This document shows positions 28,701-40,623 of a stretch of DNA of 64,000 nt, one piece after another (the first letter of the stretch is position 1; each line of letters begins with the position of its first letter). The notes under the pieces were generated by a model. That model was not told where the DNA came from. It saw only the letters and a program-made list of their open reading frames with translations, and did no database searches. Made by a program: the position numbers and the translations under genes. The stretch is taken from IMG/VR virus record IMGVR_UViG_3300018962_000001, positions 124,001 through 188,000 of that record; one strand, 5' to 3'.

Positions 28701-31700
28701 GGTGATCACCGTCGCGATTAGTTGAATCACGCCAAGGAAGACCTCAATGATTCCGCCAAGCCCGACGATCACGCCCGGCAGCACCCCGGACAGCAGATTG
28801 ATGATGAATCCCAGGACATAGAGAAACGTCGTTCCCAGAATCGTGCCCACCGTCACCAATACCGCAGCGATACCTCCTAAGATGGGCATGAGCGACCGCA
28901 GGGTATTGAAAAAGATGGTGACCAGAGGACTCAGCACCTGGAACGCGGTTTGGAGATTCGCCCAGAGGCGTCCGAACGCTAACCCAACCGCTCCCACGGC
29001 ACGTTGAAAATCATGAAAGAGCGGTTGCAGGAAGGCGATGAATCGACTCCAGGTCGGCGTGACCGTGGTGTTCCAGTACTGAACAAACTCGGCGACGCGC
29101 CCCTGAATATTGCCCCAGTTCTTCAGCCACGCCACCGTTAACAGCCCGATCACCAGCGCGATCGCGCCAATCGCGAGGGTGACGGGGTTGATCGCGACCG
29201 CTAAGGCTGAGAAGATGGCTGGCCCGGTGCGGAATAGCCCCAGGAGGTTGCTGACAGGATTGGTCAGCATGGTGAGCGGGTTCAATGCCCGCCAGATTGC
29301 GCTGAACACCGGTCCCAGCCGTGATCCCACGGCTGCCAGGACCGGGAAGCGCGTGCCGAGGGCCGTAAATAGGCCCGTAACCGTGTTGACAGGGTGGATT
29401 AACAGTTGGAATGGATTCAGGATTCCGCGCAGCGCAGGGGCTAGGGGACCAAGGTAGGTTGTCACCCCTTGGATTCCAAGATGAATCGCACCGCCAACGC
29501 GGAAGACGGCAAAGGCCGTCCCAATCCCCGCGACGACACTGAGAATCGTCCCGCCATTGGTTTGCAAGAAGGCAAAGAAGGGCTGGATTTCGGCCCGCAC
29601 CCCTTGCATCGTCGCCCGCAGATTGGCAAACTCATCGGGGAGTTGACCGAGTCCGCCGAACTCGGATTCCCAATCCACCCGTGCTTCGCCCCCCGCAGGC
29701 ATCGGAGGCAGCGGGATGTCGGGAGCCGTCATGCCAAAGAGGGCAGTGACAAATTGGACAACCGCATTGCGGGCTAAGTCGATTCGCTCCTTAGCCGTAT
29801 CAATCGTGGTGCTGAATGATTGCCATGCTTGTTGGCCTTGGGCCAGGCCAGTCGTGATATTGTCGGTGAGCTGCGTGATCGCCTGGGTCGCGTCACCAAA
29901 GGTCGATTGTTGTCCACGAGCCGCTTGATCGGCTGCTTTTTGCGCCTTTTCCTGAATGTTCAGGATCATCTGCTCAATTTCTGAGTACTCTTGTGATCCC
30001 TCGGCATAGCGACTGCGAAGGCCCATCAACAGCTCAAGGGCTTCGTTATATCGTCCTTGATCCGTCAGGAGGCGCGCTTGGGCCTTGATCTGCCGCTCAT
30101 AGGCGTTTTCTGCCTTGATCCCCGAACTTGCGATCGAACGATCCCGCTGGGCTTGCAGACGCTCAATCTGCGCCTCGATGTTGAGCCACTCTTTCGATCC
30201 CTCGGCAAAGTGCGACTGTCGCTCCCGCAGCTTCGCAATCGCTCCATCATAATCGCCGGTTGCCTTTTCCAGATTGGCTTGCGCGGCGATCTGTTGATCC
30301 ATCGCCTTCGCAGCCTTGCCGGTTGCCTCCTCCTGCAACCGTGCCCGGCGTTCTTCGAGCACCTGGATCTGGCGCAGCGTGTCAAAGTACTCCTTGCTCC
30401 CCGGCTCCAAGCCCGCCAACTTTTCGCGCAAGATGGCGATCTGCCCGTTGGTGTCCTCCAGTTCCAGGTTGTATTTTTCCTGGGCGGTTCCCACCTTGGC
30501 AGCATCGCGGGCGGCGTCCTCCGCTTGCTGGCGTTGGAGATTGGCGATCTGCTCCATGATGCGGTAGCGCTCTGCCGGATCAGTGGTTCGTTCAAGCTCC
30601 TCGTTAAGCAACGCGATTTTGCCGGGCGTATCCGCAATGGCGAGCTGGTAGTCGAGGAGGGCTTTTCGCTGCCGTTCCTGTTCTTCCGTCGCTTCACGCC
30701 GGGCTTGATTGAGTTCTCGCTCCGCTTCCAGATATTCCAGTGTGCCGGGGGTCAATTCACTTAAGCGTTGCTCTAGGATCGCGGTCTTTTCCGCCGCCGT
30801 CGCCGTTTCGAGGGCATTGCGGCGCTGCGCCTCGGCCAAGGCTTCCGCTTCTTTGCGCGACTTTTCTTCAGCCGCCGCCTGAAGCTGCGCCAACTGGGTC
30901 CGCAGCCGGTATCCTTCTTCAGACTCTTCGCCAACCGCCGCGATCCGGTCGCGCAACATTTGCTGGCGTGTTGCATCATCGGCAATCGCGTATTGATAAT
31001 CCCACTGTGCGTCCGCTAAGCGCTTGAGCCGATCTTCTTCCTTTTTGGTCCCACTTTCGCGTTCATCGGCCAGGCGATGCTCCAGGTCATAGATCTGCGC
31101 GAGAATCTTGTAGTATTCTTCACTTCCATGCTCAACATTCGCAAGTTCACCGCGCAGGATCGCCAGTTTCCCGGCAGTATCGGCAATATGGAAGTTGTAG
31201 TCGCGCTGGGCTTTCGCGCGGCGGTTGGCTTCCAAGACCGCCTCGCGTTCCCCCGGCGTCATGCCCGGCAGCAGCCCAAGTTTGCGATCTTCATTGATCT
31301 GGCGTTGAATTTGCAGCACCTGCTCCATGAAGCGGAGTTCCCGCTCTTGGAGGCGGTCGGCGGCGGCAAATCCGGCCAAACGGTCGGCGACCACCTGCTG
31401 CTGCTGTTTCAAAATCTCAAGCTGCTGCTGGAGTTGGGTCTTTTGATCGTCTTGGGCCTGTTCCTGGGCCTCCAACATCGCCAGCTGATCGCGCGCGGCA
31501 CGTTGTTGCGTAAAGGTGCGTGCGTTGCGCAGGGCACGTTCTGCCGAGCGTGTTGCTTCTTGGAGACGGCGGCGGGCGGCGGGATCATCCAAGGCCCGCA
31601 GCTTCGCTTGCACCTCATCGATCTGTTGGGTAAGAACGGCCTGATTCAACCGCTCTTGAATACGTAGGAAGATGTCGCGGTTTTGTTCGCCGAGGCGCGA

Positions 31701-33398
31701 CTCGATCTGCATCAATGATTCGGCACTGATCCTCCCCGTTTGATTGATGGAGTCGATCGCCTGCGCGACCAGTTGCGTGATCCCCGGATCTCCATTGGTG
31801 CCCACGGAGATGCGAATCGCTTCCTCAGCACTAATTTTGCCCGCCGTAACCAGCGCCGTCAGCCGATCTTGAACCTCCTCGGCGATCGTCGTCAGTGCGC
31901 CAAAGTCCGAATCGTCCCACTCAAGATAGGCCCGGAGGACCGGACTAAACCACGTGTCAATGGTCGAGAGCGGCCCTTCTCGCGGCGGCGAGAAACCACG
32001 CAAGAACGCTTCGATCCGGCTAGTGATTGCCAGGATTGCCATCTCGACGTAGCTACTGGCTCCTGCTAACATGCCATCGGCGAAGGCTGCAATGCTGTTC
32101 ACACCGCCAAGGAACAGTTCACGCGACAGGTTCTGAATCAGGCGAAGAATGAGTCCACTTAATCCCAGCAGGAGATTCGTAATCTGGGTGGCAGCCGTGC
32201 CGAAATCGCCGCTAAACAGGGAGATCAAGGCTCCCCGGAGCGGCGCGAGCGCGGCCAGCACCTGCGCTGCAAACTGGCCGTATCCTCCCACGACCCGATC
32301 CACAAAGGCCAGCGCTGGGGCGGTTGCCTGGCTGAATCCGGTTGCCATTGCCTGAACCGTGCTGATAGCGAGGCGCATGCCTGCGGCAATGCCCTGCCCC
32401 AGCGTGGCGGCGGCGGCGAATAACGCCGGGTCTTTCAGTAAATTTTCGAGGCCAACCAACTGCTCTTTGATGACATCAAAGATTGGTGCTCCGAACACGC
32501 TGCGCAGCATGAACCAGCGGTCAGAAATATTCGACAGAATACCGTCCATCGATCGGGCGGCAAGTTGGGCGGCACCGCCGAACTTCTCGGCAAGAATCTC
32601 GTTGAGGGCGGTGAGCGCCTGATCCGCCGTGCCGAGATACGTTCCCTGCGCATCGAACTTGAGTCCCTTCATCTCAAGATCGGAGCGAGTCGCAATCGCA
32701 AGCTCTCGGAGGCGGCGGAAGGCATCGCCGAAGTCACCCGTTCCAACACGAGCAATCGCGAAGGTGACTTGTTCCAATTGGCTGCTTAAATCACGGATCG
32801 CCGGACGAGTGACGACCGCTGCGTTGGCGACGTTGAGGAGAAATTCTTGCGTGCGCGCGCCAGCAACCTGGAGTTGCCGATCCGCTTCCACCAGCGCGGG
32901 CAGATCAAACGGGGTTTGCACATTAATCGCCTGCAATTCGGCAAGGCGACTTCGGGCGCGCGCGAGCATCTGCGCTGTCGTATCGCCTTCCTGTCGCAGC
33001 AGGGTCATGTAGGAGATGATGCTGTTTTCGAGTTGCTGGTTGGGACCAACCAGCCCGGAGAGTGCTGCCGAGGCAATCCGGCCTAACTCACGGAATCCAA
33101 AGGTCAACGCGCCCACGCGCGTGATCAGGCCGACCATCCCCCCGCCTAAGACGTTGATCGACGATGACAATCCTGACGAGGTTTGCTGGGCACGGACGAA
33201 CGTGTCGCGAAGCACGGAAGCCAGGGTTCGGGCTGACGCGGTAAGTGAACTCATGGATCGCGTGCTCGTCTGCGTGTTGACGTTAAACCCCTGGAGCTGT
33301 GATCCAAGCGCTTGAAGATTTGACCCGATGGCGCGGAGGGCGTTCAGCGCCGACTGGGCATTGCCCGTAAAATTTAAGAGAACCTGAATTTGATTCAC
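25755..33398 (-). CDS. Tape measure protein with C-terminal M23 peptidase and lytic transglycosylase domains
   Basis: GGAGG RBS + GTG 33398; TPFDLPAL..A..QL and GILSNISD TMP motifs; long amphipathic repeats; HEGID/YAHL/HLH (M23); ESGWNP..IN.WDSN, GLAQ, DPIENL.AA..YI..RYG (SLT). Confidence 0.95.
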   Translation of the reverse strand: MNQIQVLLNFTGNAQSALNALRAIGSNLQALGSQLQGFNVNTQTSTRSMSSLTASARTLASVLRDTFVRAQQTSSGLSSSINVLGGGMVGLITRVGALTFGFRELGRIASAALSGLVGPNQQLENSIISYMTLLRQEGDTTAQMLARARSRLAELQAINVQTPFDLPALVEADRQLQVAGARTQEFLLNVANAAVVTRPAIRDLSSQLEQVTFAIARVGTGDFGDAFRRLRELAIATRSDLEMKGLKFDAQGTYLGTADQALTALNEILAEKFGGAAQLAARSMDGILSNISDRWFMLRSVFGAPIFDVIKEQLVGLENLLKDPALFAAAATLGQGIAAGMRLAISTVQAMATGFSQATAPALAFVDRVVGGYGQFAAQVLAALAPLRGALISLFSGDFGTAATQITNLLLGLSGLILRLIQNLSRELFLGGVNSIAAFADGMLAGASSYVEMAILAITSRIEAFLRGFSPPREGPLSTIDTWFSPVLRAYLEWDDSDFGALTTIAEEVQDRLTALVTAGKISAEEAIRISVGTNGDPGITQLVAQAIDSINQTGRISAESLMQIESRLGEQNRDIFLRIQERLNQAVLTQQIDEVQAKLRALDDPAARRRLQEATRSAERALRNARTFTQQRAARDQLAMLEAQEQAQDDQKTQLQQQLEILKQQQQVVADRLAGFAAADRLQERELRFMEQVLQIQRQINEDRKLGLLPGMTPGEREAVLEANRRAKAQRDYNFHIADTAGKLAILRGELANVEHGSEEYYKILAQIYDLEHRLADERESGTKKEEDRLKRLADAQWDYQYAIADDATRQQMLRDRIAAVGEESEEGYRLRTQLAQLQAAAEEKSRKEAEALAEAQRRNALETATAAEKTAILEQRLSELTPGTLEYLEAERELNQARREATEEQERQRKALLDYQLAIADTPGKIALLNEELERTTDPAERYRIMEQIANLQRQQAEDAARDAAKVGTAQEKYNLELEDTNGQIAILREKLAGLEPGSKEYFDTLRQIQVLEERRARLQEEATGKAAKAMDQQIAAQANLEKATGDYDGAIAKLRERQSHFAEGSKEWLNIEAQIERLQAQRDRSIASSGIKAENAYERQIKAQARLLTDQGRYNEALELLMGLRSRYAEGSQEYSEIEQMILNIQEKAQKAADQAARGQQSTFGDATQAITQLTDNITTGLAQGQQAWQSFSTTIDTAKERIDLARNAVVQFVTALFGMTAPDIPLPPMPAGGEARVDWESEFGGLGQLPDEFANLRATMQGVRAEIQPFFAFLQTNGGTILSVVAGIGTAFAVFRVGGAIHLGIQGVTTYLGPLAPALRGILNPFQLLIHPVNTVTGLFTALGTRFPVLAAVGSRLGPVFSAIWRALNPLTMLTNPVSNLLGLFRTGPAIFSALAVAINPVTLAIGAIALVIGLLTVAWLKNWGNIQGRVAEFVQYWNTTVTPTWSRFIAFLQPLFHDFQRAVGAVGLAFGRLWANLQTAFQVLSPLVTIFFNTLRSLMPILGGIAAVLVTVGTILGTTFLYVLGFIINLLSGVLPGVIVGLGGIIEVFLGVIQLIATVITGVVRIVAGIIYGFYTGDWQPLWQAVGDFVQGIIDSVVSIFTGAVTTVIGLAVGLWEGVKNAFYQLWVDLVGHSIIPDMVNGIVRWFQNLWDWGLAKIQGLADAMLQTIRWMVGTWTPGGGGLLGLLATLVDTALTNIERWIGAYQQGGMLGLIRTLADDYLAAIRWMVGTYASGQNGVLGWLYWLVNEGLDALIAWVGSDSAAGSMLGTIQRLANGFFRLIGELVGRYASGGGGVLGLFWGLINDTSRTVKQWIGLSDTSGDSLIGQVAQLVVNLPNLIRNNLVGTYTVGGPGVLGLFANLVEGGKTAMRDFVGTWDDRGNGVLNGGYRAWKGMSDRISEIKEAILAPFVGAANEIGTIMKKMANTAIGPADGSSGLNAAIKGFEFFVNKFRDAINWIAEKLGAAAPLPDTFNLPTIPQYARGTRRGYHPGGPAIVGEKGPEIVMLPRGSTVLPHQETARLRRRGLLPGNYPAYELGIGDAIGDVINWISQGAGWVLDRGLSAVGFESFDFAGDAFAGVGTAIFGKVKEWALALVEGLLRAFEDAQVGTDVYDAAEFMVGSREIVSWWGDARPDTTGRHEGIDILADEGTIIRALESGVVSYQGWNGFGGNYIQIRGQSGREHYYAHLVDPANFRAGQQIERGYDIGNVGHTPYRDGEMVDHLHYQISDKRGNWVDPKLELAAFLRELRGVTQDTPDPRGGEYWPGTPGPARSWISEALAGAAVTRDWLQGLSILGKYESGWNPRSINLWDSNFRAGYPSRGLAQTIPQTFNANKRASARAYTGDLGYANGRDLGNPGDIYDPIENLIAAINYIKRRYGHIRDLPGVQSVMRGGGWVGYATGGVIREPVTGIGAHTGTNYLLGEAGPEVVVPVDRLRERLARLRAAMEDQLVALTQELEHGLLDRSLGGGAATFDRFRAQTAAPALAAVATRLNLPPITYAPTYQIEGVNYTLDQIARMIDARQEEAWAGFLRDLRAAGYI

Positions 33399-33410
33399 GG
33401 TTGTCCCTCC

Positions 33411-33439
33411 TTGCCGAAGGGACGAACGTGATCTACAGT
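33411..33439 (+). promoter_or_regulatory. Sigma70-type promoter for orphan pentamer RNA
   Basis: TTGCCG-17-TACAGT, 11 nt upstream of the GGNNN tract. Confidence 0.55.
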
Positions 33440-33450
33440 GCGGTGAACGC

Positions 33451-33530
33451 GGCCTGGATCGGCCTGAGACGGCATCGACGGGCAAGGCACGGTTGGGCTA
33501 TCCGTGGCTAGGTATGGTTGGGCGTGGCGC
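33451..33530 (+). ncRNA. Orphan (GGY-NN)16 pentamer-tract RNA, candidate guide
   Basis: 16 in-register pentamers, 13 starting GG; flanked by promoter and terminator. Confidence 0.65.
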
Positions 33531-33559
33531 AGCACCTCACATGTGTGAGGTGCTGTTTG
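33530..33559 (+). terminator. Rho-independent terminator
   Basis: CAGCACCTCAC-ATGT-GTGAGGTGCTG-TTT. Confidence 0.75.
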
Positions 33560-33688
33560 ATTCTTGGGATGCCAACGGTGCCCCATCCGAGCCTCGCACG
33601 ATACGGATCATGTGTCGGATGGGCGAGCACGGGGGAATGGTGGCCCATATAGGAGAAGTCGGGGCAGATGCGCGGACTTCTGCCCCGT

Positions 33689-33717
33689 AGTATAGCAAAG
33701 ACCAGCGGCGTCGTCTA
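33689..33717 (-). promoter_or_regulatory. Promoter re-starting transcription towards tape measure gene
   Basis: TAGACG-17-TATACT with extended -10 TG; followed by hairpin CGGGGCAGA...TCTGCCCCG. Confidence 0.65.
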
Positions 33718-33906
33718 GGATGGGTCGGTGGGGGACTCCCACGGGAAGGGAATCCCATTGGCGAGAAAATACTTCCGCCAAAACTCGGTGTCGAAGGGAT
33801 GGCGATCCGGCGGCGGCGGCGTGAGATGGCGCGTCTTAATGGCTGCCGCGATTGCCACCAGCGAACGGTAGATCACGGCCCAGAACAAGCGATCGGCGTT
33901 CTTCAT
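33715..33906 (-). CDS. Small hypothetical protein
   Basis: AAGGAGG RBS before ATG 33906 (MKNADRLFW...). Confidence 0.65.
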   Translation of the reverse strand: MKNADRLFWAVIYRSLVAIAAAIKTRHLTPPPPDRHPFDTEFWRKYFLANGIPFPWESPTDPS

Positions 33907-33916
33907 TGTTCCTCCT

Positions 33917-34924
33917 TTAAGGAGCAGTGCGCTCCGCTGCTTCGATGGTGTGAATCCCGGTGAGAAGTTGATAATACGCCAAGCTTCCAGGCTGAAATAA
34001 GAGCAGATAGCCTTGGAGCAACTCTTTCCGCGTGGCACGCGCGGGTTCTAAGGTGATGCGTGCTCGAATCAGCGCCATCCGTTCGTCATCCGTCAACTGC
34101 GGATCGGCCAGCCGATCTTCAAGCAGCAGGATCTTCTGGACGCGCGCAGCGGCAGCGAGGGCCATTGTGGTCGGCGAGATGATCGAGTCGGAGTCGTCCT
34201 CCGGTGGCGTATAAGGCCGGGGGGCAGCTAATCGGGTGGTTGGCCCCGTCGCCGGACGCAGACGTTGATAAATCTCGACCCACGACAGGCCCAACCGCCG
34301 GAGTGCGAGGATTTCCGCACGCCGGTTCGGCAGATTCTGATAGGCCACCGACTGACGCAGATCCTCCCAGAGCGGCTGAATCTCGCTGAACCACTGCTGA
34401 CGGCGGAGAACATCCTGTGGCCCCGGATCAAGCACTCGCACCTCCTCCGGCCAGAAAGCAATCGCCTGATCGATCTGGAGATTAATGAGTCCCAGTGGCA
34501 CGCCCGCAGCATCGCACTCAACACCATCTTGATCGATCCACGGCTTGTGCGGTGATCGCCGGATGAGATGGGGTTTCGTTCCCTGGATGACCGGGAAGAT
34601 CGCCGGATCGAGTGGGGGGACAAAGGCCGCATGCGACGTGGGATCATCCACGCGGGCCAGATCTGGGATCGTGTGCCCACACCCGGAACAAAACTTCGCA
34701 CCGGGTTCGATTCCACGATACCCACAGCGGGTACACTGATTTGCTGCGCGCGCGCGCTGTAGGCACTGATTTGCGAGCAATGTCCGGGACCGAAACTCTG
34801 CCAGATCAGATCGATAGAGCAGGGTGGTCCGGTAGGCTGCATACAAGGTCGCCATCAGGACTCCTACCTGAACTCCCTCACTCGAAAGATGGAATAGGAG
34901 ATCCACGAACCAATCATTCATCAC
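33917..34924 (-). CDS. Membrane-anchored Zn-ribbon protein
   Basis: N-terminal hydrophobic helix; CTRCG...GAKFCSGCG; coupled to upstream HTH gene. Confidence 0.7.
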   Translation of the reverse strand: MMNDWFVDLLFHLSSEGVQVGVLMATLYAAYRTTLLYRSDLAEFRSRTLLANQCLQRARAANQCTRCGYRGIEPGAKFCSGCGHTIPDLARVDDPTSHAAFVPPLDPAIFPVIQGTKPHLIRRSPHKPWIDQDGVECDAAGVPLGLINLQIDQAIAFWPEEVRVLDPGPQDVLRRQQWFSEIQPLWEDLRQSVAYQNLPNRRAEILALRRLGLSWVEIYQRLRPATGPTTRLAAPRPYTPPEDDSDSIISPTTMALAAAARVQKILLLEDRLADPQLTDDERMALIRARITLEPARATRKELLQGYLLLFQPGSLAYYQLLTGIHTIEAAERTAP

Positions 34925-35136
34925 TCCTCCCGTTCCTCCGGCGGCGGCGGCGCGAACAATGCCAGCAACGGCACACCGAGCGCGGCAGCCATTTTGTCAA
35001 GCGATCCGATCGTTAACGTCTCGACGTGGCGATTATGCCAGGCTTTGCGAACCGTCCCCACCCCCAGATCGGCCCGTCGTGCCAGCTTCGAGATATTTAA
35101 CGCCTGGGCGGTGGCGATAACAGCTACTTGAAACAT
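34921..35136 (-). CDS. Cro/C1-type (XRE) HTH regulator
   Basis: LNISKLARRADLGVGTVRKAW...TIGSLDKMAAALGV; AAGGAGG RBS. Confidence 0.85.
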   Translation of the reverse strand: MFQVAVIATAQALNISKLARRADLGVGTVRKAWHNRHVETLTIGSLDKMAAALGVPLLALFAPPPPEEREE

Positions 35137-35176
35137 TCGATCCTCCTTCCTCGTGTGGAGCGCGCATCATTGTGCA

Positions 35177-35260
35177 TTGACAGACCGCATATCTATGTTA
35201 TACTGTCATTATAATGTATAGTATATAGAGTATAGCATACAAAACCTATGCTACATTATA
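35177..35260. promoter_or_regulatory. AT-rich divergent promoter/operator region between HTH gene and pentamer array
   Basis: TTGACA-16-TATACT (35177-35204); near-palindrome TATACTGTCATTATAATGTATAGTATA; inverted repeat TAGCATA-N7-TATGCTA (35233-35253). Confidence 0.7.
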
Positions 35261-35309
35261 CTCCCACTCCCGGCAGAATGCTAGACATTCGACAGATGAA
35301 TTCGGACAT

Positions 35310-35710
35310 GGTTGGGTGTGGATTGGCTAGGCTAGGAGAGGCACGGTGAGGTCTGGCACGGATGACTCTGCACTGAGTCCAATCCCTTCGGGGTATCTGG
35401 GTATGGCATGGGAACGGTTGGGTCCGGTAAGGATCGGCTGGGAGCGGCAAGGTGTGGCAAGGTCGGGCTGGGCCGGGCAACGCAGGGCACGGATGGCGGT
35501 GTATTCCGCCACCATTCCCCACCAGGGGAATACGAGGATGGCTGGGCGCGGGCATGGCGAGGCGTGGCAAGTCGAGGCTGGGCCGCGCTAGGTGCGGCAA
35601 GGCACGGATGATCGTGGATTCGATCACCATCCCTCACACGAGGGTTATTTGGCTCGGATCGGTCAGGATTGGCTAGGTCAGGTGGGGCTGGGTGAGGCTT
35701 GGTTTGGTAC
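35310..35710 (+). repeat. Array 1: four (GGY-NN)n pentamer units, the first three each closed by two hairpins (candidate guide RNA array)
   Basis: Tracts of 10, 16-18, 11-13 and 12 pentamers at 35310, 35400, 35540, 35651; conserved GGCAC-GGATG-stem-TGNAYT-stem end. Confidence 0.9.
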
Positions 35711-35720
35711 AAGGAGCAGT

Positions 35721-36359
35721 ATGATGGCATCCAACATGATTCAAGCGACGGTTGAGATCCAGGGAACGAAGCCACTGTTGTGGCACGCCTTTACGCCCGA
35801 CAGCATTCCGGCGGACGGCAAGAAGGAAAAGACCGGGGTGGCGGGTAACGATCCCCAGGAATGGCGGCGATCCTTCCTGGCGGATCACGAAGGCCGCTTG
35901 TTTGTGAACCCGGAATACATCTTCGGCTGCCTGCGCGATGGCGCGCGACACACCAAAAAAGGCCGTGGATCGATTATGTCGAATGTGGCGGCAACGCTTC
36001 AGATCGTGGACGAGCGGATCTACACCGATCGCTATTTCCCACGCAACGGCGCGACTGGCCCCTTTGATCCGGCATCGGCGGATCGCCCGCCGATCGAGAT
36101 CACCGAGCCGGTTTATCTCGACGTGCGATCGGTGAAGAACCCGTCCACGAAAGGTCGGAACGTCCGCTACCGGGTGGCGGCGAGTCCAGGGTGGCGGGCG
36201 AGCTTTACGATTCTGTGGGACAAAACCATTGTCAGCCGCACCGAGATGGAGGCGGTCATTACTGATGCGGGCCGACTCGTCGGGCTGGGTGATGGCCGAT
36301 CGATCGGCTTTGGTCGATTCATGGTGGTGCCAGGGTCCATCACGTTTACCGAGGTCTAG
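35721..36359 (+). CDS. Stand-alone RAMP / Cas7-like RNA-binding protein (Vipr-like)
   Basis: AAGGAG RBS; VEIQGTKPLL (beta1), LFVNPEYIFGCLRDGA (alpha1), C-terminal Gly-rich loop GLGDGRSIGFGRF, all RAMP hallmarks; no other cas genes. Confidence 0.85.
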   Translation: MMASNMIQATVEIQGTKPLLWHAFTPDSIPADGKKEKTGVAGNDPQEWRRSFLADHEGRLFVNPEYIFGCLRDGARHTKKGRGSIMSNVAATLQIVDERIYTDRYFPRNGATGPFDPASADRPPIEITEPVYLDVRSVKNPSTKGRNVRYRVAASPGWRASFTILWDKTIVSRTEMEAVITDAGRLVGLGDGRSIGFGRFMVVPGSITFTEV

Positions 36360-36369
36360 AGTCTTTCGA

Positions 36370-36427
36370 GGCGAGGCATGGTGAGGTGAGGTATGGGGTG
36401 GTTGGCGAGGTACGGCCTGGCAAGGAG
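36370..36427 (+). repeat. Pentamer tract (unit 5) forming the leader of the HNH gene
   Basis: GGCGA GGCAT GGTGA GGTGA GGTAT GGGGT GGTT GGCGA GGTAC GGCCT GGCAA GGAG. Confidence 0.85.
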
Positions 36428-36434
36428 TTTGAAC

Positions 36435-36752
36435 ATGGGCATGAAACGACAACCTCCGAAGATCTGGGAAGGAACCCGCAAACGAATATTCGAACGCGAT
36501 CGGGGGATCTGCCAATCTCCCCTGGCTCCACCCCTGTGTCAAGGGAAACGCGGCGAGTTAACGCTTGCCACGGCGCATATCGACCACCGGCGAAGCGGTC
36601 GGTTTGGCACGAATGCGGATAGCAACCTCCGGGTGCTCTGCCGCGCGTGCCACGTCCTCCGCGACGATCCGCGCCACCGAGGCATGATCGGCGGAGCCTT
36701 GCGCGACGGGATCATCCCTCCCCATTGGCGGGAGCTAACCTGGGGAGAGTAG
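36435..36752 (+). CDS. HNH endonuclease
   Basis: RKRIFERDRGICQ...C...AHIDH......GTN.DSNLRVLCRACH. Confidence 0.9.
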   Translation: MGMKRQPPKIWEGTRKRIFERDRGICQSPLAPPLCQGKRGELTLATAHIDHRRSGRFGTNADSNLRVLCRACHVLRDDPRHRGMIGGALRDGIIPPHWRELTWGE

Positions 36753-36974
36753 ATGGGTCGTCCAAGGCACAGAACGGGTGCCGTGCGCCAGCTGCCGTGG
36801 CGCAGAGTCGTCACGGCAGCACGTGATGGCGGAATCATGGGGGCGGTGCTGGGAGGGGTGTTCTTTGGCCCTTCTGGCGCGCTGGTGACCAGCTTAGTAG
36901 GAGCGGTGGCAGCGGCGGCGGTTCGCTGGTATCGAAGCGTCAAGGCGAGAGGTCGCATGGGAAGGCATGGATGA
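36753..36974 (+). CDS. Small glycine-zipper membrane protein
   Basis: GGAG RBS, starts at HNH stop; GGIMGAVLGGVFFGPSGALVTSLVGAVAAAAV followed by basic residues. Confidence 0.6.
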   Translation: MGRPRHRTGAVRQLPWRRVVTAARDGGIMGAVLGGVFFGPSGALVTSLVGAVAAAAVRWYRSVKARGRMGRHG

Positions 36975-37325
36975 TCGTGGATCGATCCCACTTCTCGGTT
37001 GGGCAAGCGAGGGTCTGGCAAGGACAGGCAAGGCTTGGCTCGGCAGGGTCGGGTTCGGCTGGGCAAGGATACTGGTGTTTCCAGTACCATCGATTGGGTG
37101 TGGCGGGGCGGTGGTAGGGTGGGGCTTGGCTTGGTCCGGCACGGCAGGGATGATGGTGTCTCCATTCCACCTCATGGTCGGGCGAGGAGGGGCGAGGCAG
37201 GGCTAGGCGGGGCAAGGTGAGGCCCGGCAAGGTTCGGCACCGATCCTCGTGTCATCGAGGCCACCACGGGGTATGCCGAGGCGTGGTAAGGTGAGGCTAG
37301 GCTGCGGTGAGGTCCGGCGAGACGG
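36943..37325 (+). repeat. Array 2: one degenerate plus four (GGY-NN)n units with single hairpins
   Basis: Tracts at 36997 (14), 37097 (10), 37176 (13), 37270 (about 11); hairpins TACTGG-TGTTT-CCAGTA, ATGG-TGTCT-CCAT, CCTCG-TGTCAT-CGAGG. Confidence 0.9.
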
Positions 37326-37327
37326 GG

Positions 37328-37358
37328 AACAGGACGGGTGCTGGTCACCCGTCCTGTT
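37328..37358. terminator. Strong hairpin between convergent array and tail chaperone gene
   Basis: AACAGGACGGGTG-CTGGT-CACCCGTCCTGTT, 13-bp perfect stem. Confidence 0.7.
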
Positions 37359-37830
37359 GATTCTCCGGTGCCTGGTCGGCGAACTCATCAACCTTGTTGG
37401 CACGTTTGTAGGCTTGCCAGAAGGCTGACTGCATCGGCGGCGGCGGCGGCGGGGCGAATGGATCTTGATAGACCTTCTCAAACGGCGGCAGCGCCTGCGG
37501 TTTCTTGCCACCGAACGCGGGTCCAAGGACGCGGGCCAGGGCGGTTTCGAGGGCCATAATCTGACTCATTTGCTGGTCCCAGCGATTCCGCGCGACCTGC
37601 TGGTACTCGCGATGGAGTCGCCGCCACCGCCAGCCCAGCACCTCCTCCAGGGGCAAATGCCGGGTTGCCACGATCTCGGTCACCATGTCGTCGATCAGGG
37701 TGCCAATGGCTCCTATGATGTCGAAGGCGAGTTGACCACCGTTGCGCCAGCTGGTGGTGGAGTCTTGGCCGGTTGTTGATTGCGCTTGCCCCACAGCTCC
37801 ACCGCTTGCCGGGCGAGCGTGAAGTTTCCC
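37345..37830 (-). CDS. Tail assembly chaperone, -1 frameshift extension (gpGT-like T part)
   Basis: Open in the -1 frame from slippery site 37830; LPLEEVLGWRWRRL resembles gpT-type motif. Confidence 0.8.
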   Translation of the reverse strand, partial: GKLHARPASGGAVGQAQSTTGQDSTTSWRNGGQLAFDIIGAIGTLIDDMVTEIVATRHLPLEEVLGWRWRRLHREYQQVARNRWDQQMSQIMALETALARVLGPAFGGKKPQALPPFEKVYQDPFAPPPPPPMQSAFWQAYKRANKVDEFADQAPENQQDG

Positions 37831-38378
37831 AGTGCCGCTGCCAAGTCTTCGGACTGCCGGATGCGCCAGGCCAGTGCCTTCACAATCGGCGCGACCTTTA
37901 CATCGTCCTCCGACAGCTGCCGGAAAAACAACTCCGCCTCTTTCTTCTGGTGATCCTTGCCACCGAACAACACGATCGCGGCAATCCGCAAAAAGTGTTG
38001 CACATTGATGGTTGCAAGCAAGGCGAAGATCGTGGCTTCAAATGGCTGCGCCGACTGGACCTTGCCGTTCACCAGCGCTGTAAACGCACTGCCCAGCTGC
38101 CCGGCGAGGTATTTTTCAGCCCGCAACGACACGTCCCCAATCACATTACACAGTGCCAAGATCGCGTGAATATCGGGTTCTCCGATCTCAAAGACTCGTC
38201 CGCCAAAGGTGACTCGATAGTCCACCACTTCCTCGACCACCGCCTCCGTAGGCCCGTCCTCGGCAGCTGGTGGAAACAAGGGTTCATCGGGCGCAGCGAT
38301 CGGTTCCGATCCCCAGAGCGATTGGTCGTTGGGCAAGGGAGCCTGGCCCCCCAGGTCGAAGCTATTGCCGTCTGCCAT
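37713..38378 (-). CDS. Tail assembly chaperone (gpG-like)
   Basis: Directly after major tail gene; acidic N-terminus; contains slippery site. Confidence 0.8.
   Translation of the reverse strand: MADGNSFDLGGQAPLPNDQSLWGSEPIAAPDEPLFPPAAEDGPTEAVVEEVVDYRVTFGGRVFEIGEPDIHAILALCNVIGDVSLRAEKYLAGQLGSAFTALVNGKVQSAQPFEATIFALLATINVQHFLRIAAIVLFGGKDHQKKEAELFFRQLSEDDVKVAPIVKALAWRIRQSEDLAAALGNFTLARQAVELWGKRNQQPAKTPPPAGATVVNSPSTS
37824..37830 (-). other. Programmed -1 ribosomal frameshift site G GGA AAC
   Basis: X XXY YYZ heptamer in frame with gpG ORF; -1 frame continues without stop to 37345. Confidence 0.85.
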
Positions 38379-38390
38379 AGCGAATCCTTC

Positions 38391-39056
38391 TTAGGTAAGC
38401 TCAAACAAGAGTCCGAAGTCCGAGCCGTCCGTGACGCCGGGATCGGGCAGGATGTTAAAGCTAAACTCGTTCGTGGTCGTGCCACGCGATTGAATTTGGA
38501 AGTCTCCGGCGGAGGCGATCCGCGCTTTCCGCAAGAAGAACATGCGAATCTTGCCGGTCACATCATTTTGCTGGAGCACCACCAGCGGGCGCTCGATCAA
38601 GGCAGATGGCGCACCAAGCCCTACCCGTCGCTGCGCAGCGTTGGCGGGCGTCCCGCTCGGGTTTGCGGAAATCGCGGTGATCGCGCCGAGTGCCCACAAC
38701 CATTTCATACGGTCGAGACTGGTATCCATACTGGTCCCGCCGAGCGTCATGGCAAAGTTATTCGGACGACCGCCGCGCAGCGGATAATCGCGTTGATCGA
38801 TATTGATGCCGTCTTGTATATCAAAGCTGCGACCGAGCGTAATTCCATCCTCACTGGTCGCCCCGAAGTCATGATAGCCATCTTCCAGGGCGTAGCTCGT
38901 CAGATTCAGGATGTCCTCAATGTAGCGCGGCACCGCCTGAGTCGGCACCGGCGTTTCCGGCGCGACCGCGGCATAAACGAGGCGTGCCCCGCCTTGCCAG
39001 ATGCGCGCATCTGCGCTGGCATCAATACTAATGGCACTAACCAGTTGCGTTGCCAT
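38391..39056 (-). CDS. Major tail (tube) protein
   Basis: RIWQGGARL...DFGATSEDGITL...FSFNIL tube-protein pattern and position. Confidence 0.85.
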   Translation of the reverse strand: MATQLVSAISIDASADARIWQGGARLVYAAVAPETPVPTQAVPRYIEDILNLTSYALEDGYHDFGATSEDGITLGRSFDIQDGINIDQRDYPLRGGRPNNFAMTLGGTSMDTSLDRMKWLWALGAITAISANPSGTPANAAQRRVGLGAPSALIERPLVVLQQNDVTGKIRMFFLRKARIASAGDFQIQSRGTTTNEFSFNILPDPGVTDGSDFGLLFELT

Positions 39057-39583: not shown

Positions 39584-40093
39584 TTATCCCATCGTTCCCA
39601 GCGCATCGCGCGCCACCTGCCGCAAACGAGCGATCGTCTCGGCCTGCGTCCGCTGCCACGCGCGTTCAATAAATGGATTGGGCCGAGTACCGGGATGATT
39701 GACCTTCCGAAAGAAGTAGATCCCCCCGGTCCCAAACGGCGCATTCGGCCATTCAAACGCCAAGGCCCGGCCACGGCGCGATCGAATGACGTGAGGCGGT
39801 GATCCTTCCACGACCAGCGGGATCAGATCGGCATGCGGGCCTTCGGCAATGATTTGTGCTTGTGCCCGACCTGGCCCGAGCGAACGAATCCGATACGTGA
39901 TCGAATCGGCCATGTGCGGATCGGCCCGATTCGCCTCAGTTCGCACACCGCGCGGCGCTTCGGCACGCAGCGCCTCCACGACTCGCTCGGCTTCTTCCCG
40001 CAGCCGTTGGATCTGGGCACGCTCTAAACTGCTGGAATACCGGGCATAGCGACCTTGCGCATCGCGGAGTCCCGTCGTCGTCAGGGTAATCAT
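39584..40093 (-). CDS. HK97 gp10-like tail completion protein
   Basis: AEAP....HMADSI...VVEGSPPHVIR...ALAF...VNHPGTRPNPFIERA. Confidence 0.85.
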   Translation of the reverse strand: MITLTTTGLRDAQGRYARYSSSLERAQIQRLREEAERVVEALRAEAPRGVRTEANRADPHMADSITYRIRSLGPGRAQAQIIAEGPHADLIPLVVEGSPPHVIRSRRGRALAFEWPNAPFGTGGIYFFRKVNHPGTRPNPFIERAWQRTQAETIARLRQVARDALGTMG

Positions 40094-40623
40094 CGCGTGT
40101 ACCTCACTTGCAGGCCGATCGTGGTTGATCCTCCGGCGAGCAGGCCCAACTCCGCGCCAATGTTCGGGCCGGTGTCCGGGCGCAGGCTCGATGCTTGGCC
40201 TTCGTCCACCGGCGGCGTGATCGACATGATCTCGTAGGGCCAGCGTGGCTCTGCGGCGAGGATCGTTTCCAGCAGGGCTTCGCCATACCGCCAGCCCATC
40301 AGGGTTGCTTCTCGTACAGTTGGTCCCAGGACCTGCCATTCCACCAGCACGCTGTGGAGCGCCAGCGCAATCTTCTGACTTGTCTGGCCCGGTAGCGGCG
40401 ACCGAGGCGCAGCGATCACGGCTACGCGCGGAAAGTCGTCGATAAACAAATCCAGCACGTTCTCCCGAAAGCCGAACGTGATCTCGGCAGGCGGGGGGAG
40501 CACAATCGGCTCACGGGCTGCCCAGCGCGTTTGCACCGTGCTCAGCCAGGTAGGCAGATCCGCGCGAATGGCCTCCTCGACGGCCCGCGCCACATACTCG
40601 GTTTGCAGCGCTGGTGTTGCCAC
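40090..40623 (-). CDS. Putative tail terminator protein
   Basis: Position, size, FPRVAVI motif. Confidence 0.65.
   Translation of the reverse strand: MATPALQTEYVARAVEEAIRADLPTWLSTVQTRWAAREPIVLPPPAEITFGFRENVLDLFIDDFPRVAVIAAPRSPLPGQTSQKIALALHSVLVEWQVLGPTVREATLMGWRYGEALLETILAAEPRWPYEIMSITPPVDEGQASSLRPDTGPNIGAELGLLAGGSTTIGLQVRYTR

What the first reader, a model, noticed from the sequence alone, without database searches (positions are those of the whole stretch)
36370..36974. HNH nuclease and glycine-zipper membrane protein co-transcribed inside the RAMP array
Seen: an intact HNH motif (HIDH...N...NLRVLCRACH, plus N-terminal Zn cysteines) follows the RAMP gene and has its own pentamer-tract leader, so it looks integral to the module. 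A 73-aa Gly-zipper membrane ORF starts at its stop codon. Established: some class 1 CRISPR variants use an HNH domain as effector, but phage HNH genes are also often homing or packaging nucleases. Inference: this may be a DNA-cleaving variant in which a separate HNH subunit is recruited to the RNP, with the membrane protein as a possible abortive or exclusion effector.
Basis: partly seen in the sequence, partly recalled or inferred. Interest (0 to 1): 0.75.

Follow-up and report, generated by a model that had tools for sequence, protein, structure and literature searches.

The report
HNH nuclease gene of phage VIPR system
This stretch is the accessory HNH nuclease gene of a phage-borne VIPR system, a CRISPR-like RNA-guided system first described in 2026 preprints. 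The nuclease belongs to the system, but the supposed 73-aa membrane gene behind it is most likely a decayed guide-RNA unit, not a gene.

Summary
The HNH ORF is real and intact. It follows a RAMP-fold gene and is preceded by a GG-every-5-nt tract. The locus is not a CRISPR variant. It is a VIPR system (bioRxiv 10.64898/2026.04.26.720920).

- **Vipr protein:** the RAMP gene (35721-36359) has a Cas7-like fold. It matches all five UniProt seeds of the VIPR paper and aligns to the inferred phage SUSP1 Vipr ORF (hhalign 97.5%).
- **Guide RNAs:** about ten GGYNN-repeat guide tracts (vrRNAs) flank the genes, and they occur nowhere else in the 205-kb phage.
- **HNH linkage:** HNH homologues lie directly downstream of the Vipr gene in about 60 of 66 Vipr-anchored loci. 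The reverse holds in 103 of 109 assessable HNH-anchored loci. The two proteins co-diverge (Mantel r 0.57).
- **Guide target:** read by the published one-base-skip code, guide vrB spells the HEXXH active-site motif of ImmA/IrrE protease genes of other phages. The phage has no such gene and no self-target.

Guide-directed cutting by HNH is inferred, not shown.

**73-aa ORF:** it is an orphan with poor codon usage. Its base composition matches the vrRNA arrays, and it ends in a copy of the vrRNA tail. It is probably not a gene.

Verdict: a new member of a known kind.

The parts
33451..33556 (+). vr0: solitary GGYNN tract (33451-33530) followed by a 12-bp terminator-like hairpin (33529-33556). It lies on the far side of the two minus-strand genes.
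33917..34924 (-). ORF with a weak zinc-ribbon match, inside the inserted island. Function unknown.
   Evidence: PF13240, E 0.0028, below the cut-off
34921..35136 (-). Cro/C1-type HTH gene, divergent from the VIPR operon. It is a positional analogue of the small XRE-type HTH gene found upstream in 16 related loci, but it is not detectably homologous to them.
35177..35204 (+). Sigma-70-like promoter (TTGACA, 16 nt, TATACT; 11 of 12 matches, TG-extended) in an AT-rich divergent region.
35310..35710 (+). Upstream vrRNA array. Tracts: vrA 35310-35359, vrB 35411-35490 (16 units), vrC 35551-35605, vrD 35651-35710. vrA to vrC each end in a tail of GGCAC GGAUGA plus a hairpin whose stem sequence differs between copies.
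35721..36359 (+). vipr: 212-aa single-domain RAMP protein with a glycine-rich loop (GLGDGRSIGFGRF).
36370..36430 (+). vrE: GGYNN tract between vipr and HNH (7 units, a 1-nt slip, then 5 more). It has no tail, and its last units contain the HNH ribosome-binding site AAGGAG.
36435..36752 (+). HNH accessory nuclease gene (vap-type), 105 aa from the likely start. The mechanical ORF starts at 36393. It carries a conserved C-terminal extension (RHRGMI..AL.DGIIP..WRELxW).
36753..36974 (+). 73-codon ORF, most likely a decayed vrRNA unit rather than a gene. It is G-rich, has a GG-pentamer remnant at 36831-36880, and runs into a tail copy.
36959..37000 (+). vrRNA tail copy. Positions 36959-36982 are 92% identical to the tail of vrC. 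It overlaps the 3' end of the 73-codon ORF.
36997..37304 (+). Downstream vrRNA array. Tracts: vrF 36997-37066, vrG 37113-37147, vrH 37176-37240, vrI 37270-37304, with short hairpin tails. vrI shares its first five NN dinucleotides with vrC.
37322..37356 (.). Inverted repeat between the end of the operon and the convergent minus-strand gene 37345-37794. It is a candidate terminator read by eye; the scan did not call it.

Best explanation
Region 36370-36974 is the middle of a phage-encoded VIPR (Viral Interference Programmable Repeat) operon. The operon is inserted between the tail-chaperone and tape-measure genes of a 205-kb phage from a biocrust metagenome.

Proposed working:
1. One promoter (about 35177) probably drives four guide units, vipr, guide unit vrE, the HNH gene, and four or five more guide units.
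2. Each guide (vrRNA) is a run of 7-16 GGYNN units. By the published mechanism, one Vipr protomer binds each unit. It hides the GGY and presents the NN pair, so the filament reads double-stranded DNA as NNxNNx, skipping the codon wobble base.
3. In this phage at least one guide (vrB) reads the HEXXH active-site motif of ImmA/IrrE metalloprotease genes. These are lysogeny-switch genes of other temperate phages, so the system is aimed at rival phages or prophages.
4. The HNH protein is the system's obligate accessory nuclease. The most likely role is that it docks on the Vipr-vrRNA-DNA complex, perhaps through its conserved C-terminal extension, and cuts the bound target. That would turn silencing into destruction.
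5. The 73-codon ORF is not part of the machinery. It is most likely an eroded guide unit whose G-rich DNA translates into a Gly/Ala/Val-rich peptide.

Shown here: identity of the parts, linkage, co-divergence, guide decoding, and absence of self-targets.
Taken from the preprints: filament formation and the one-base-skip rule.
Inferred: HNH docking and guide-dependent cutting, and operon transcription.
For: Vipr identity:
- The AF2 model has pLDDT 84.9.
- Its best PDB matches are Cas7-family proteins (Cmr4, Csm3, type VII Cas7): Foldseek E about 5e-8, VIA Z 9.8-10.9.
- In AFDB clusters, hits 2, 3, 4, 5 and 9 are the five UniProt seeds named in the VIPR discovery pipeline: X1U2U4, A0A661D0E2, A0A0F9A1L0, A0A1F4YLN4 and A0A2D6XG06.
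- The family profile aligns to the 195-aa ORF I take to be the SUSP1 Vipr over nearly its full length, at 97.5% probability and E 8.8e-12.

Guides:
- The GGYNN tracts are unique to this locus and strand.
- The same kind of tract lies on the gene strand in 101 of 146 related loci, including genomes of 31-40% GC. Only 1 locus has one on the other strand.

HNH linkage:
- About 60 of 66 Vipr-anchored loci and 103 of 113 HNH-anchored loci carry the pair.
- Apart from a small divergent XRE-type HTH gene upstream in 16 loci, no flanking gene is shared widely.
- Vipr and HNH distances correlate: Mantel r 0.57, with 0 of 999 permutations reaching it.
- The catalytic and zinc-binding residues are invariant.

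Targeting:
- 75 of 96 hits lie in an open frame in the wobble-aligned phase, and about 58 read (R)FTLAHE[LF]GH.
- A representative gene matches Pfam Peptidase_M78 at E 2.6e-19.
- The 10-unit core gave 3 exact hits in the same gene.
- Control guides gave 17 and 25 hits with no coherent family.
- There is no self-target and no Peptidase_M78 gene in the phage.

73-codon ORF.

Literature.
Against: - No experiment or prediction here bears on HNH-Vipr contact. The complex job was not folded.
- The preprints show silencing by type II systems that have non-nuclease Vaps. They only predict nuclease function for HNH-type Vaps. HNH is not mentioned in the two follow-up preprints.
- Only one of the five guides tested gave a recognisable target. 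The best full-length vrB match is 26 of 32 NN bases, and the matched contigs were pre-selected by the pattern.
- The matched viral contigs span 27-64% GC, so none is shown to be the natural target.
- No RNA data exist for this phage. Only DNA runs hold it. Expression and processing of the guides are therefore unverified.
- The window's guide tails match no known ribozyme, so how the units are separated is unknown.
- The VIPR type (III versus V) could not be assigned because the figure and tables are not held.
Confidence: 0.78

Rival explanations
1. The HNH is a selfish homing or mobility endonuclease. It moves the cassette between phage genomes and cuts independently of the guide RNAs.
For: - HNH genes are typical of mobile elements (established knowledge; also stated in PMC12669027).
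- The two-gene module sits among largely unrelated neighbours in different genomes.
- It often lies near integrase or recombinase genes.
- Several copies occur in some genomes, for example 4 in Oscillochloris sp. ZM17-4.
Against: - Linkage to Vipr is near-obligate in both directions, and the two proteins co-diverge.
- The protein is about 96 aa. It has no extra DNA-binding domain, only a clade-specific C-terminal extension.
- Other VIPR types carry non-nuclease Vaps in the same position, and deleting vap1 in SUSP1 abolishes VIPR function.
Confidence: 0.08
2. HNH is activated by target binding but cuts DNA non-specifically. This would be a collateral or abortive effector, not one that cuts the guide-bound site.
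For: - HNH effectors of signalling systems such as CBASS Cap5 are among the weak structural matches.
- Nothing here defines a cut site.
Against: - No sensor or signalling domain is present in the 105-aa protein or in the module.
- A phage-borne system that degrades all DNA would also hit the phage itself.
- The known HNH fusions to class 1 effectors cut the guided target (PMC12669027).
Confidence: 0.1
3. The 73-codon ORF is a real small membrane protein translated by coupling to HNH, for example a superinfection-exclusion or lysis-related factor specific to this phage lineage.
For: - Its ATG directly follows the HNH stop, with GGGGAG a few bases upstream.
- It has one hydrophobic stretch (Kyte-Doolittle 19-residue mean 1.69).
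- A few related loci have unrelated small hydrophobic ORFs after HNH (8 of 149).
Against: - It matches only itself among 5.8 billion proteins and has no relative in 179 loci.
- Its codon score is -0.048 per codon. That is below the 5th percentile of real 73-codon windows and close to off-frame values. It also lacks the GC3-over-GC2 pattern of this genome's genes.
- Its composition is G 0.42, C 0.23, like the guide arrays and unlike vipr or HNH.
- Its glycine-rich core coincides with a GG-pentamer remnant, and its 3' end is a vrRNA tail copy.
Confidence: 0.12
4. The locus is a class 1 CRISPR-Cas variant, or an HRAMP/ARAMP-type derivative, with a separate HNH subunit.
For: - The RAMP protein has a Cas7-like fold.
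- Array-less RAMP systems with HNH nucleases are known in archaea.
Against: - Repeat searches of the locus found no CRISPR repeat-spacer array.
- There is no second RAMP (Cas5) and no large or small subunit gene.
- PADLOC gave only a Cas6 match at E 0.039.
- The repeats are 5-nt units inside the guide, not 25-40-nt repeats between spacers.
- The protein groups with the VIPR seeds ahead of CRISPR RAMPs.
Confidence: 0.02

Closest known systems
VIPR systems with nuclease-type accessory genes (types III-V; HNH Vap shown in fig. S21 of bioRxiv 10.64898/2026.04.26.720920)
   Same: - A single small Vipr RAMP protein.
- GGYNN/YNNGG-repeat guide RNAs.
- A two-gene vipr-vap operon with an HNH accessory protein.
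- Guides that decode to phage genes, with no self-targeting.
- Related loci in my set carry hammerhead-interspersed arrays or a single guide, both architectures named in the paper.
   Different: - The paper describes types III and V as enriched in cellular defence islands. This copy sits inside the tail-gene block of a complete 205-kb phage.
- It carries about ten guides without ribozymes, in upstream and downstream arrays that resemble the type II layout.
- The exact type could not be assigned because the figure and tables are not held.
- Nuclease activity of HNH Vaps is only predicted in the paper.
Type II VIPR of Escherichia phage SUSP1 (vipr + vap1)
   Same: - Homologous Vipr (hhalign 97.5%, E 8.8e-12, with the inferred SUSP1 ORF).
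- Guides upstream and downstream of the two genes.
- Each guide is a repeat tract followed by a structured tail.
- Phage-encoded and aimed at rival mobile elements.
   Different: - The SUSP1 Vap1 (146 aa) is a predicted DNA-binding protein, not a nuclease, and the demonstrated outcome is transcriptional silencing.
- tblastn does not connect the two Vipr proteins (no hit in GenBank phages).
- The tail sequences differ.
HNH-bearing class 1 CRISPR effectors (I-E2 Cas5-HNH, I-F4 Cas8-HNH, IV-A2 DinG-HNH)
   Same: A RAMP-based RNA-guided DNA-binding complex that uses an HNH domain as its only nuclease. This is the best precedent for guide-directed cutting.
   Different: - There the HNH is fused to a Cas subunit of a multi-protein Cascade with a CRISPR array and contiguous guides.
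- Here it is a separate 105-aa protein beside a single RAMP, with gapped guides.
HRAMP / ARAMP (array-less type III-derived systems of Haloarchaea and Asgard archaea)
   Same: RAMP proteins without CRISPR arrays, associated with nucleases that are often HNH.
   Different: - Those systems have both Cas5 and Cas7 homologues plus further genes, and they are archaeal and cellular.
- No pentamer-repeat guide RNA has been reported for them in the texts read.
Phage packaging HNH endonucleases (HK97 gp74 type) and free-standing homing HNH genes
   Same: A small phage-encoded HNH protein with zinc-binding cysteines.
   Different: - It is not adjacent to terminase genes, either here or in related loci.
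- Its constant partner is Vipr, not terminase or an intron.

Membership tests
VIPR system | Vipr protein: a small (about 20 kDa) single-RRM RAMP homologue with a glycine-rich loop, related to the family's founding members | tested here: met
   - 212 aa with the motif GLGDGRSIGFGRF.
- Cas7-like fold.
- All five UniProt seeds of the discovery paper are among the top nine AFDB-cluster hits.
- hhalign to the inferred SUSP1 Vipr ORF: 97.5%, E 8.8e-12.
VIPR system | vrRNAs: tandem YNNGG/GGYNN repeats (9-16 units) with conserved GGY and variable NN, in the intergenic DNA flanking vipr | tested here: met
   - Ten tracts of 7-16 units on the gene strand, unique in the genome.
- The third base is mostly a pyrimidine, and the NN pairs differ between tracts.
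- Two or three tracts are short or degenerate.
VIPR system | Conserved structured 3' tail after the repeat tract | tested here: met
   - Seven tails share GGCA(C)GGAUGA followed by a hairpin. The stem sequence differs between copies while pairing is kept (for example GGCGG/CCGCC, GAUCG/CGAUC, ACUGG/CCAGU).
- Single-hairpin energies are not significant on their own.
- No pseudoknot was tested.
VIPR system | Minimal two-gene operon: vipr plus one accessory gene (vap) | tested here: met
   - vipr and HNH are adjacent here.
- They are adjacent in about 60 of 66 and 103 of 113 related loci.
- Neighbours are otherwise mostly unshared.
VIPR system | Mostly viral or proviral location | tested here: met
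   - The genome is a virus record, 204,685 bases, with a CheckV completeness estimate of 100%.
- Tail genes flank the island.
- 33 related loci come from IMG/VR contigs.
VIPR system | Targets read by NN pairs with a one-base skip that falls on codon wobble positions; no self-targeting | tested here: inconclusive
   - vrB decodes in wobble phase to the Peptidase_M78 HEXXH motif, with strong enrichment over two control guides.
- There is no self-match above shuffled guides.
- vrF, vrH and vrD gave no target.
- Searches were limited to exact sub-patterns.
- The natural target phage was not identified.
VIPR system | Vipr-vrRNA filament formation and binding of double-stranded DNA | not testable with these tools
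   - This needs expression, pull-down and binding assays.
- No RNA run holds this phage.
Guide-directed HNH effector (as in Cas5-HNH / Cas8-HNH Cascade) | HNH physically joined to the RNP and cutting the guide-bound DNA | not tested
   - The complex job was not folded because an RNA chain was included.
- Only linkage, co-divergence and intact catalytic residues are shown.
Class 1 CRISPR-Cas | CRISPR repeat-spacer array and a multi-subunit effector (Cas5, Cas7, large and small subunits) with or without Cas6 and adaptation genes | tested here: not met
   - No such array was found by tandem and direct repeat searches of the locus.
- PADLOC gave only Cas6 at E 0.039, and NCBIfam gave no Cas family.
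- There is a single RAMP gene.
Phage packaging HNH (HK97 gp74 type) | Position next to the terminase genes and cos site | tested here: not met
   - Here it lies between the tail-chaperone and tape-measure genes.
- In related loci the sampled downstream genes differ from locus to locus. As far as read, they include integrases and recombinases. None was confirmed as a terminase.
Type II hammerhead ribozyme (RF02276) guide processing | A hammerhead above the Rfam gathering score between guide units | tested here: not met
   - None in the window (regex).
- Present in related HNH-type loci L155, L157 and L163 at 38-52 bits.
- By regex it also occurs after HNH in about 20 loci.

The most novel reading that the evidence does not exclude
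The HNH-type VIPR of this phage is a guide-directed DNA-cutting weapon, not a silencer. Vipr filaments loaded with guides such as vrB recognise the most conserved codons of rival prophages' lysogeny-switch genes (the ImmA/IrrE HEXXH motif). They then recruit the free-standing 105-aa HNH through its C-terminal extension to cut there.

In addition, HNH synthesis may be gated by the system itself. The guide tract vrE contains the HNH ribosome-binding site, so Vipr coating of vrE on the mRNA could couple nuclease dosage to RNP assembly. Neither point is addressed in the preprints I read.
Probability: 0.3. Interest if true: 0.65.

Novelty: new member of a known kind. Interest (0 to 1): 0.45.

Why it matters
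VIPR is a very recent discovery: a one-protein, gapped-guide DNA-recognition system proposed to predate CRISPR. Only its silencing (type II) form has been studied experimentally.

- **A test case for the nuclease-bearing form.** This locus is a clean, complete, phage-borne example. It has about ten guides, an intact 105-aa HNH partner, and one guide with a readable target motif. That makes the open question directly testable: does a separate HNH turn VIPR binding into guide-directed cutting?
- **Size and cohesion of the HNH-type clade.** The comparative data show that the clade is very large. More than 2,000 Vipr relatives share 55-67% identity, spread across at least eight phyla. The clade is tightly co-inherited, which is useful for choosing orthologues.
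- **Annotation.** G-rich guide arrays can masquerade as glycine-rich "membrane" ORFs.

Tried and rejected
- **Complex prediction.** I submitted two Vipr copies, a 40-nt guide and HNH. It was counted but not folded because an RNA chain was included. It gives no evidence either way.
- **Target searches.**
  - The vrF 10-unit core had 0 hits.
  - The vrH and vrD 8-unit cores gave 17 and 25 background-like hits with no extension.
  - No guide had a match above shuffled guides in 1.1 Mb of related loci.
- **Rfam.** No family matched at E up to 1 in 33000-39000, so the window's guide tails are not a known ribozyme.
- **Defence and family libraries.** PADLOC and NCBIfam gave nothing beyond generic HNH matches (ZorE, IscB) and Cas6 at E 0.039.
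- **Cultured phages.** tblastn of Vipr against 50,697 GenBank phages found no match.
- **HNH-only search.** A search of viral contigs with the single HNH protein failed. The alignment-based search worked.
- **HNH fold search.** Only weak, generic HNH matches (best E 0.046).
- **Sequencing runs.** Only DNA runs from one biocrust study hold the phage, and their fragments are identical. This gives no strain variation and no RNA.
- **Packaging-HNH idea.** Considered because of large downstream ORFs in some loci. Rejected after reading them, since the neighbours vary and include integrases.
- **Coding pentapeptide-repeat reading of the tracts.** Rejected because the period is 5 nt and the GG pairs are fixed in all three frames.
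- **HTH homology.** The window's HTH is not detectably homologous to the XRE cluster found upstream in 16 loci.
- **VIPR type.** It could not be assigned because no supplementary files are held.
Full report
**1. What is at the coordinates**

The window is part of a single 204,685-base virus record. CheckV estimates it as 100% complete, and it comes from a biocrust metagenome.

Most genes here run on the minus strand and are structural:
- a 2,576-aa tape-measure-like ORF at 25755-33485;
- a major tail protein at 38391-39056;
- a neck protein at 39584-40339.

A 4-kb island sits between the tape-measure gene and the tail genes.
- Two minus-strand genes: a weak zinc-ribbon ORF (33917-34924) and a Cro/C1-type HTH (34921-35136).
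- An AT-rich divergent region with a near-consensus promoter at 35177-35204.
- A plus-strand block that holds the finding.

The plus-strand block contains:
- a 212-aa gene at 35721-36359;
- the HNH ORF. The mechanical start is 36393, but the likely start is ATG 36435, eight bases after AAGGAG, matching the homologues' N-termini;
- a 73-codon ORF at 36753-36974, beginning right after the HNH stop.

**2. The pentamer tracts are real and unique**

I scored GG dinucleotides spaced every 5 nt. The whole genome has such tracts only at this locus and only on the plus strand. The genome-wide frequency of a score of 8 or more of 10 is about 2.5e-4.

Parsed in frame, there are ten tracts of 7-16 GGYNN units:
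- vr0 at 33451-33530, followed by a terminator-like hairpin;
- vrA to vrD upstream of the 212-aa gene;
- vrF to vrI after the 73-codon ORF.

Seven tracts end in a shared tail, GGCA(C)GGAUGA plus a hairpin. The stem sequence changes between copies while pairing is kept.

**3. The RAMP call is right, as a fold**

The 212-aa protein has no Pfam family. It belongs to a very large and unusually conserved family: more than 2,000 proteins at E below 1e-3, the best at 55-67% identity, all unnamed.

An alignment-based AF2 model has pLDDT 84.9 and pTM 0.80. Its best matches to solved structures are Cas7-family subunits:
- Foldseek: Cmr4, Csm3, type VII Cas7 and gRAMP domains, at E about 5e-8 and probability 1.0.
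- VIA-align: Z 10.9 to 9.1 for Cmr-beta, Csm3, type VII Cas7 and type IV Csf2.

**4. HNH belongs to the module**

Searching species-representative genomes and IMG/VR with the RAMP alignment gave 66 loci. They span Armatimonadota, Acidobacteria, Chloroflexi, Firmicutes, Cyanobacteria, Chlamydiae, Verrucomicrobia and Parcubacteria.

- An HNH homologue (43-62% identity) lies directly downstream in about 60 of them. The exceptions are truncated contigs or partial genes.
- In the reverse test, 113 loci were found through the HNH alignment. Of these, 103 carry the RAMP gene directly upstream (gap -25 to 389 nt), 4 are cut by a contig end, and 6 lack an adjacent RAMP gene. One of those six is an unrelated 34%-identity HNH.
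- Among flanking genes, the only widely shared one is a small XRE-type HTH gene, divergent upstream in 16 loci. The pair therefore moves as a unit.
- Pairwise distances of the two proteins correlate across 131 unique pairs: Mantel r 0.57, with 0 of 999 permutations reaching it. This shows co-inheritance, not contact.
- The catalytic and zinc residues are invariant, and a clade-specific C-terminal extension is conserved.
- The HNH model (pLDDT 87.3) matches only generic HNH domains, and weakly.

**5. The tracts travel with the pair**

At a strict threshold, 101 of 146 complete loci have at least one tract on the gene strand near the module, and only 1 has one on the other strand. The tracts lie between the genes (39 loci), downstream (44), in both places (10) or upstream. 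This holds in genomes of 31-40% GC, where a G-rich tract cannot be compositional.

Some loci have arrays of six or seven tracts. In L155, L157 and L163 the tracts are separated by type II hammerhead ribozymes above Rfam's gathering score (38-52 bits against 37). A regex finds hammerheads right after HNH in about 20 loci, including six in Marinithermofilum. The window has none.

**6. Identity: a VIPR system**

A literature search found three 2026 preprints on Viral Interference Programmable Repeat systems. As described there:
- A VIPR locus has a roughly 20-kDa RAMP homologue (Vipr), an accessory gene (vap1-6), and vrRNAs of 9-16 YNNGG repeats plus a conserved tail.
- One Vipr protomer binds each repeat.
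- The NN pairs read double-stranded DNA with one skipped base per pair, and the skipped base usually falls on the codon wobble position.
- Seven types exist. Types III-V carry predicted nucleases or helicases, and an HNH Vap is pictured.
- Hammerhead-interspersed arrays and single-guide loci are reported.
- Experiments cover only type II systems (SUSP1, P. fulva), which silence transcription.
- HNH is absent from the text of the two follow-up preprints.

I tested membership directly.
- The five UniProt seeds named in the discovery pipeline are hits 2, 3, 4, 5 and 9 for my model in AFDB clusters, ahead of most CRISPR RAMP entries (one Cmr6 cluster ranks 6th).
- In phage SUSP1 (KT454805, recalled from memory and confirmed by the record's title), a two-gene block is flanked by GGYNN tracts. 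The paper's text does not give coordinates, so I infer from this layout that its 195-aa ORF is the Vipr gene. That ORF aligns to my family profile at 97.5% probability, E 8.8e-12, over nearly the full length.
- The locus is therefore a VIPR system with an HNH-type Vap. It is not a class 1 CRISPR variant. There is no CRISPR array, no second RAMP and no other Cas family.

**7. Does it work like a VIPR?**

I decoded the NN pairs and applied the one-skip rule.
- **Self-targeting.** No guide matches its own genome better than shuffled guides do. This agrees with the papers.
- **vrB.**
  - Of 96 matches, 75 lie in an open frame in the phase where the skipped base is the wobble base, against 11 in the other orientation.
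  - About 58 read (R)FTLAHE[LF]GH.
  - A representative gene is Pfam Peptidase_M78, the ImmA/IrrE family, at E 2.6e-19.
  - The 10-unit core gave three exact hits in the same gene. There, units 1-12 match 23 of 24 bases, and the next unit expects a CGN arginine codon where the low-GC prophage uses AGA.
  - The full guide decodes to V-L-[FL]-R-[HQ]-R-[FL]-T-[FL]-A-[HQ]-[DE]-[FL]-G-[HQ]-V, which is the HEXXH region.
- **Controls.** Two other 8-unit cores gave 17 and 25 hits with no coherent family and no extension. One 10-unit core gave none.
- **Own genome.** The phage has no Peptidase_M78 gene, while the control genomes did give matches.

This supports the code and points to lysogeny-switch genes of other temperate phages as one target class, in line with the published P. 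fulva findings.

Caveats:
- The contigs were pre-selected by the pattern.
- The best full-length match is 26 of 32.
- The natural target is unidentified.

**8. The 73-codon ORF**

It exists as an ORF, but several lines of evidence count against it being a gene.
- It has no relative in any of 179 related loci.
- It matches only itself among 5.8 billion proteins.
- Its codon score is -0.048 per codon. Real 73-codon windows average 0.316 with a 5th percentile of -0.016, and off-frame windows have a 95th percentile of -0.076. It also lacks the excess of GC3 over GC2 seen in this genome's genes.
- Its composition is G 0.42, C 0.23. The flanking guide arrays are G 0.41-0.43, C 0.21-0.22, whereas vipr and HNH are G 0.31-0.33, C 0.28-0.32.
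- The part that encodes the "glycine zipper" (from 36831) is a GG-pentamer remnant, scoring 5 of 10 (genome frequency of that score or higher is about 0.2%).
- The ORF's 3' end runs into a tail copy (36959-36982) that is 92% identical to the tail of vrC.
- Across the family, only 8 of 149 loci have any small hydrophobic ORF after HNH, and apart from one pair these ORFs are unrelated.

The simplest reading is an eroded guide unit whose G-rich DNA translates into Gly/Ala/Val. A lineage-specific small protein is not excluded (about 0.12).

**9. Mechanism and limits**

Shown here:
- the identity of the parts;
- obligate linkage and co-divergence;
- intact catalytic residues;
- guide decoding for one guide;
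- absence of self-targets.

Taken from the preprints: the filament and the skip rule.

Inferred:
- that all parts are one transcript;
- that the guides are processed without a ribozyme;
- that HNH docks on the complex and cuts the bound DNA.

My single complex job was not folded because I included an RNA chain, so there is no evidence on contact. No RNA data exist for this phage.

One detail worth testing is that vrE's last units contain the HNH ribosome-binding site. Vipr binding there could tune HNH translation. This is speculation.

**10. Verdict**

The frame is wrong, though: this is VIPR, not CRISPR. The membrane-effector idea is not supported.

Because VIPR and its HNH-type accessory genes have been described since spring 2026, this is a new member of a known kind. 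Its remaining interest lies in the untested nuclease function, in the phage-borne multi-guide architecture, and in a guide with a readable target.

Noticed in passing
L155:1746-2129, L157:1641-2658, L163:1352-2221; also L013:5870-6711: Related HNH-type loci carry arrays of up to seven guide tracts separated by type II hammerhead ribozymes (RF02276, 38-52 bits, above the gathering score). In about 20 loci a hammerhead sits directly after the HNH stop, which would give the guide a ribozyme-defined 5' end.
   Followed up: partly
window 33451-33556: A solitary guide-like tract with its own strong terminator hairpin lies 1.7 kb upstream of the main array, beyond two minus-strand genes. It may be a separately transcribed guide, comparable to the 'solo vrRNAs' of the October 2026 preprint.
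   Followed up: partly
window 35551-35575 and 37270-37294: Guides vrC and vrI share their first five NN dinucleotides (AT GA GT AA GA). They look like paralogous guides against the same or related targets. The target was not identified.
   Followed up: no
window 36421-36437: The ribosome-binding site of HNH (AAGGAG) is formed by the last units of guide tract vrE. Vipr binding to this tract on the mRNA could affect HNH translation.
   Followed up: no
window, whole: CGATCG occurs 105 times in 64 kb, against about 21 expected from base composition by my own estimate. The HIP1 octamer GCGATCGC occurs 7 times. This hints at a cyanobacterial or similar host for this 61% GC biocrust phage.
   Followed up: no
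window 6949-33485: Four giant minus-strand ORFs lie in the structural region: 1,991 aa, 1,426 aa, 2,235 aa and a 2,576-aa tape-measure-like protein with a C-terminal peptidase/lysozyme-like region. A further 1,686-aa ORF is at 45238-50298.
   Followed up: no
L012:10206-10558: A tmRNA gene (172 bits) lies about 4.5 kb from the module in Paenibacillus ferrarius, next to a serine-recombinase-like ORF. This is consistent with a prophage or island integrated at ssrA.
   Followed up: no
L317 (SUSP1, KT454805) 27499-29511: The SUSP1 record annotates the two VIPR genes only as hypothetical proteins and leaves the flanking 450-530-nt guide regions unannotated. GGYNN tracts were found at 27887-27966 and 29162-29231 on the minus strand.
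   Followed up: partly
L048, L049, L053, L055-L061 (Nostocales loci): Cyanobacterial members have the Vipr-HNH pair, but no tract passes the strict GG-every-5 threshold. Their HNH proteins carry an N-terminal extension of about 30 aa. They may use one of the alternative repeat consensuses mentioned in the preprint.
   Followed up: no
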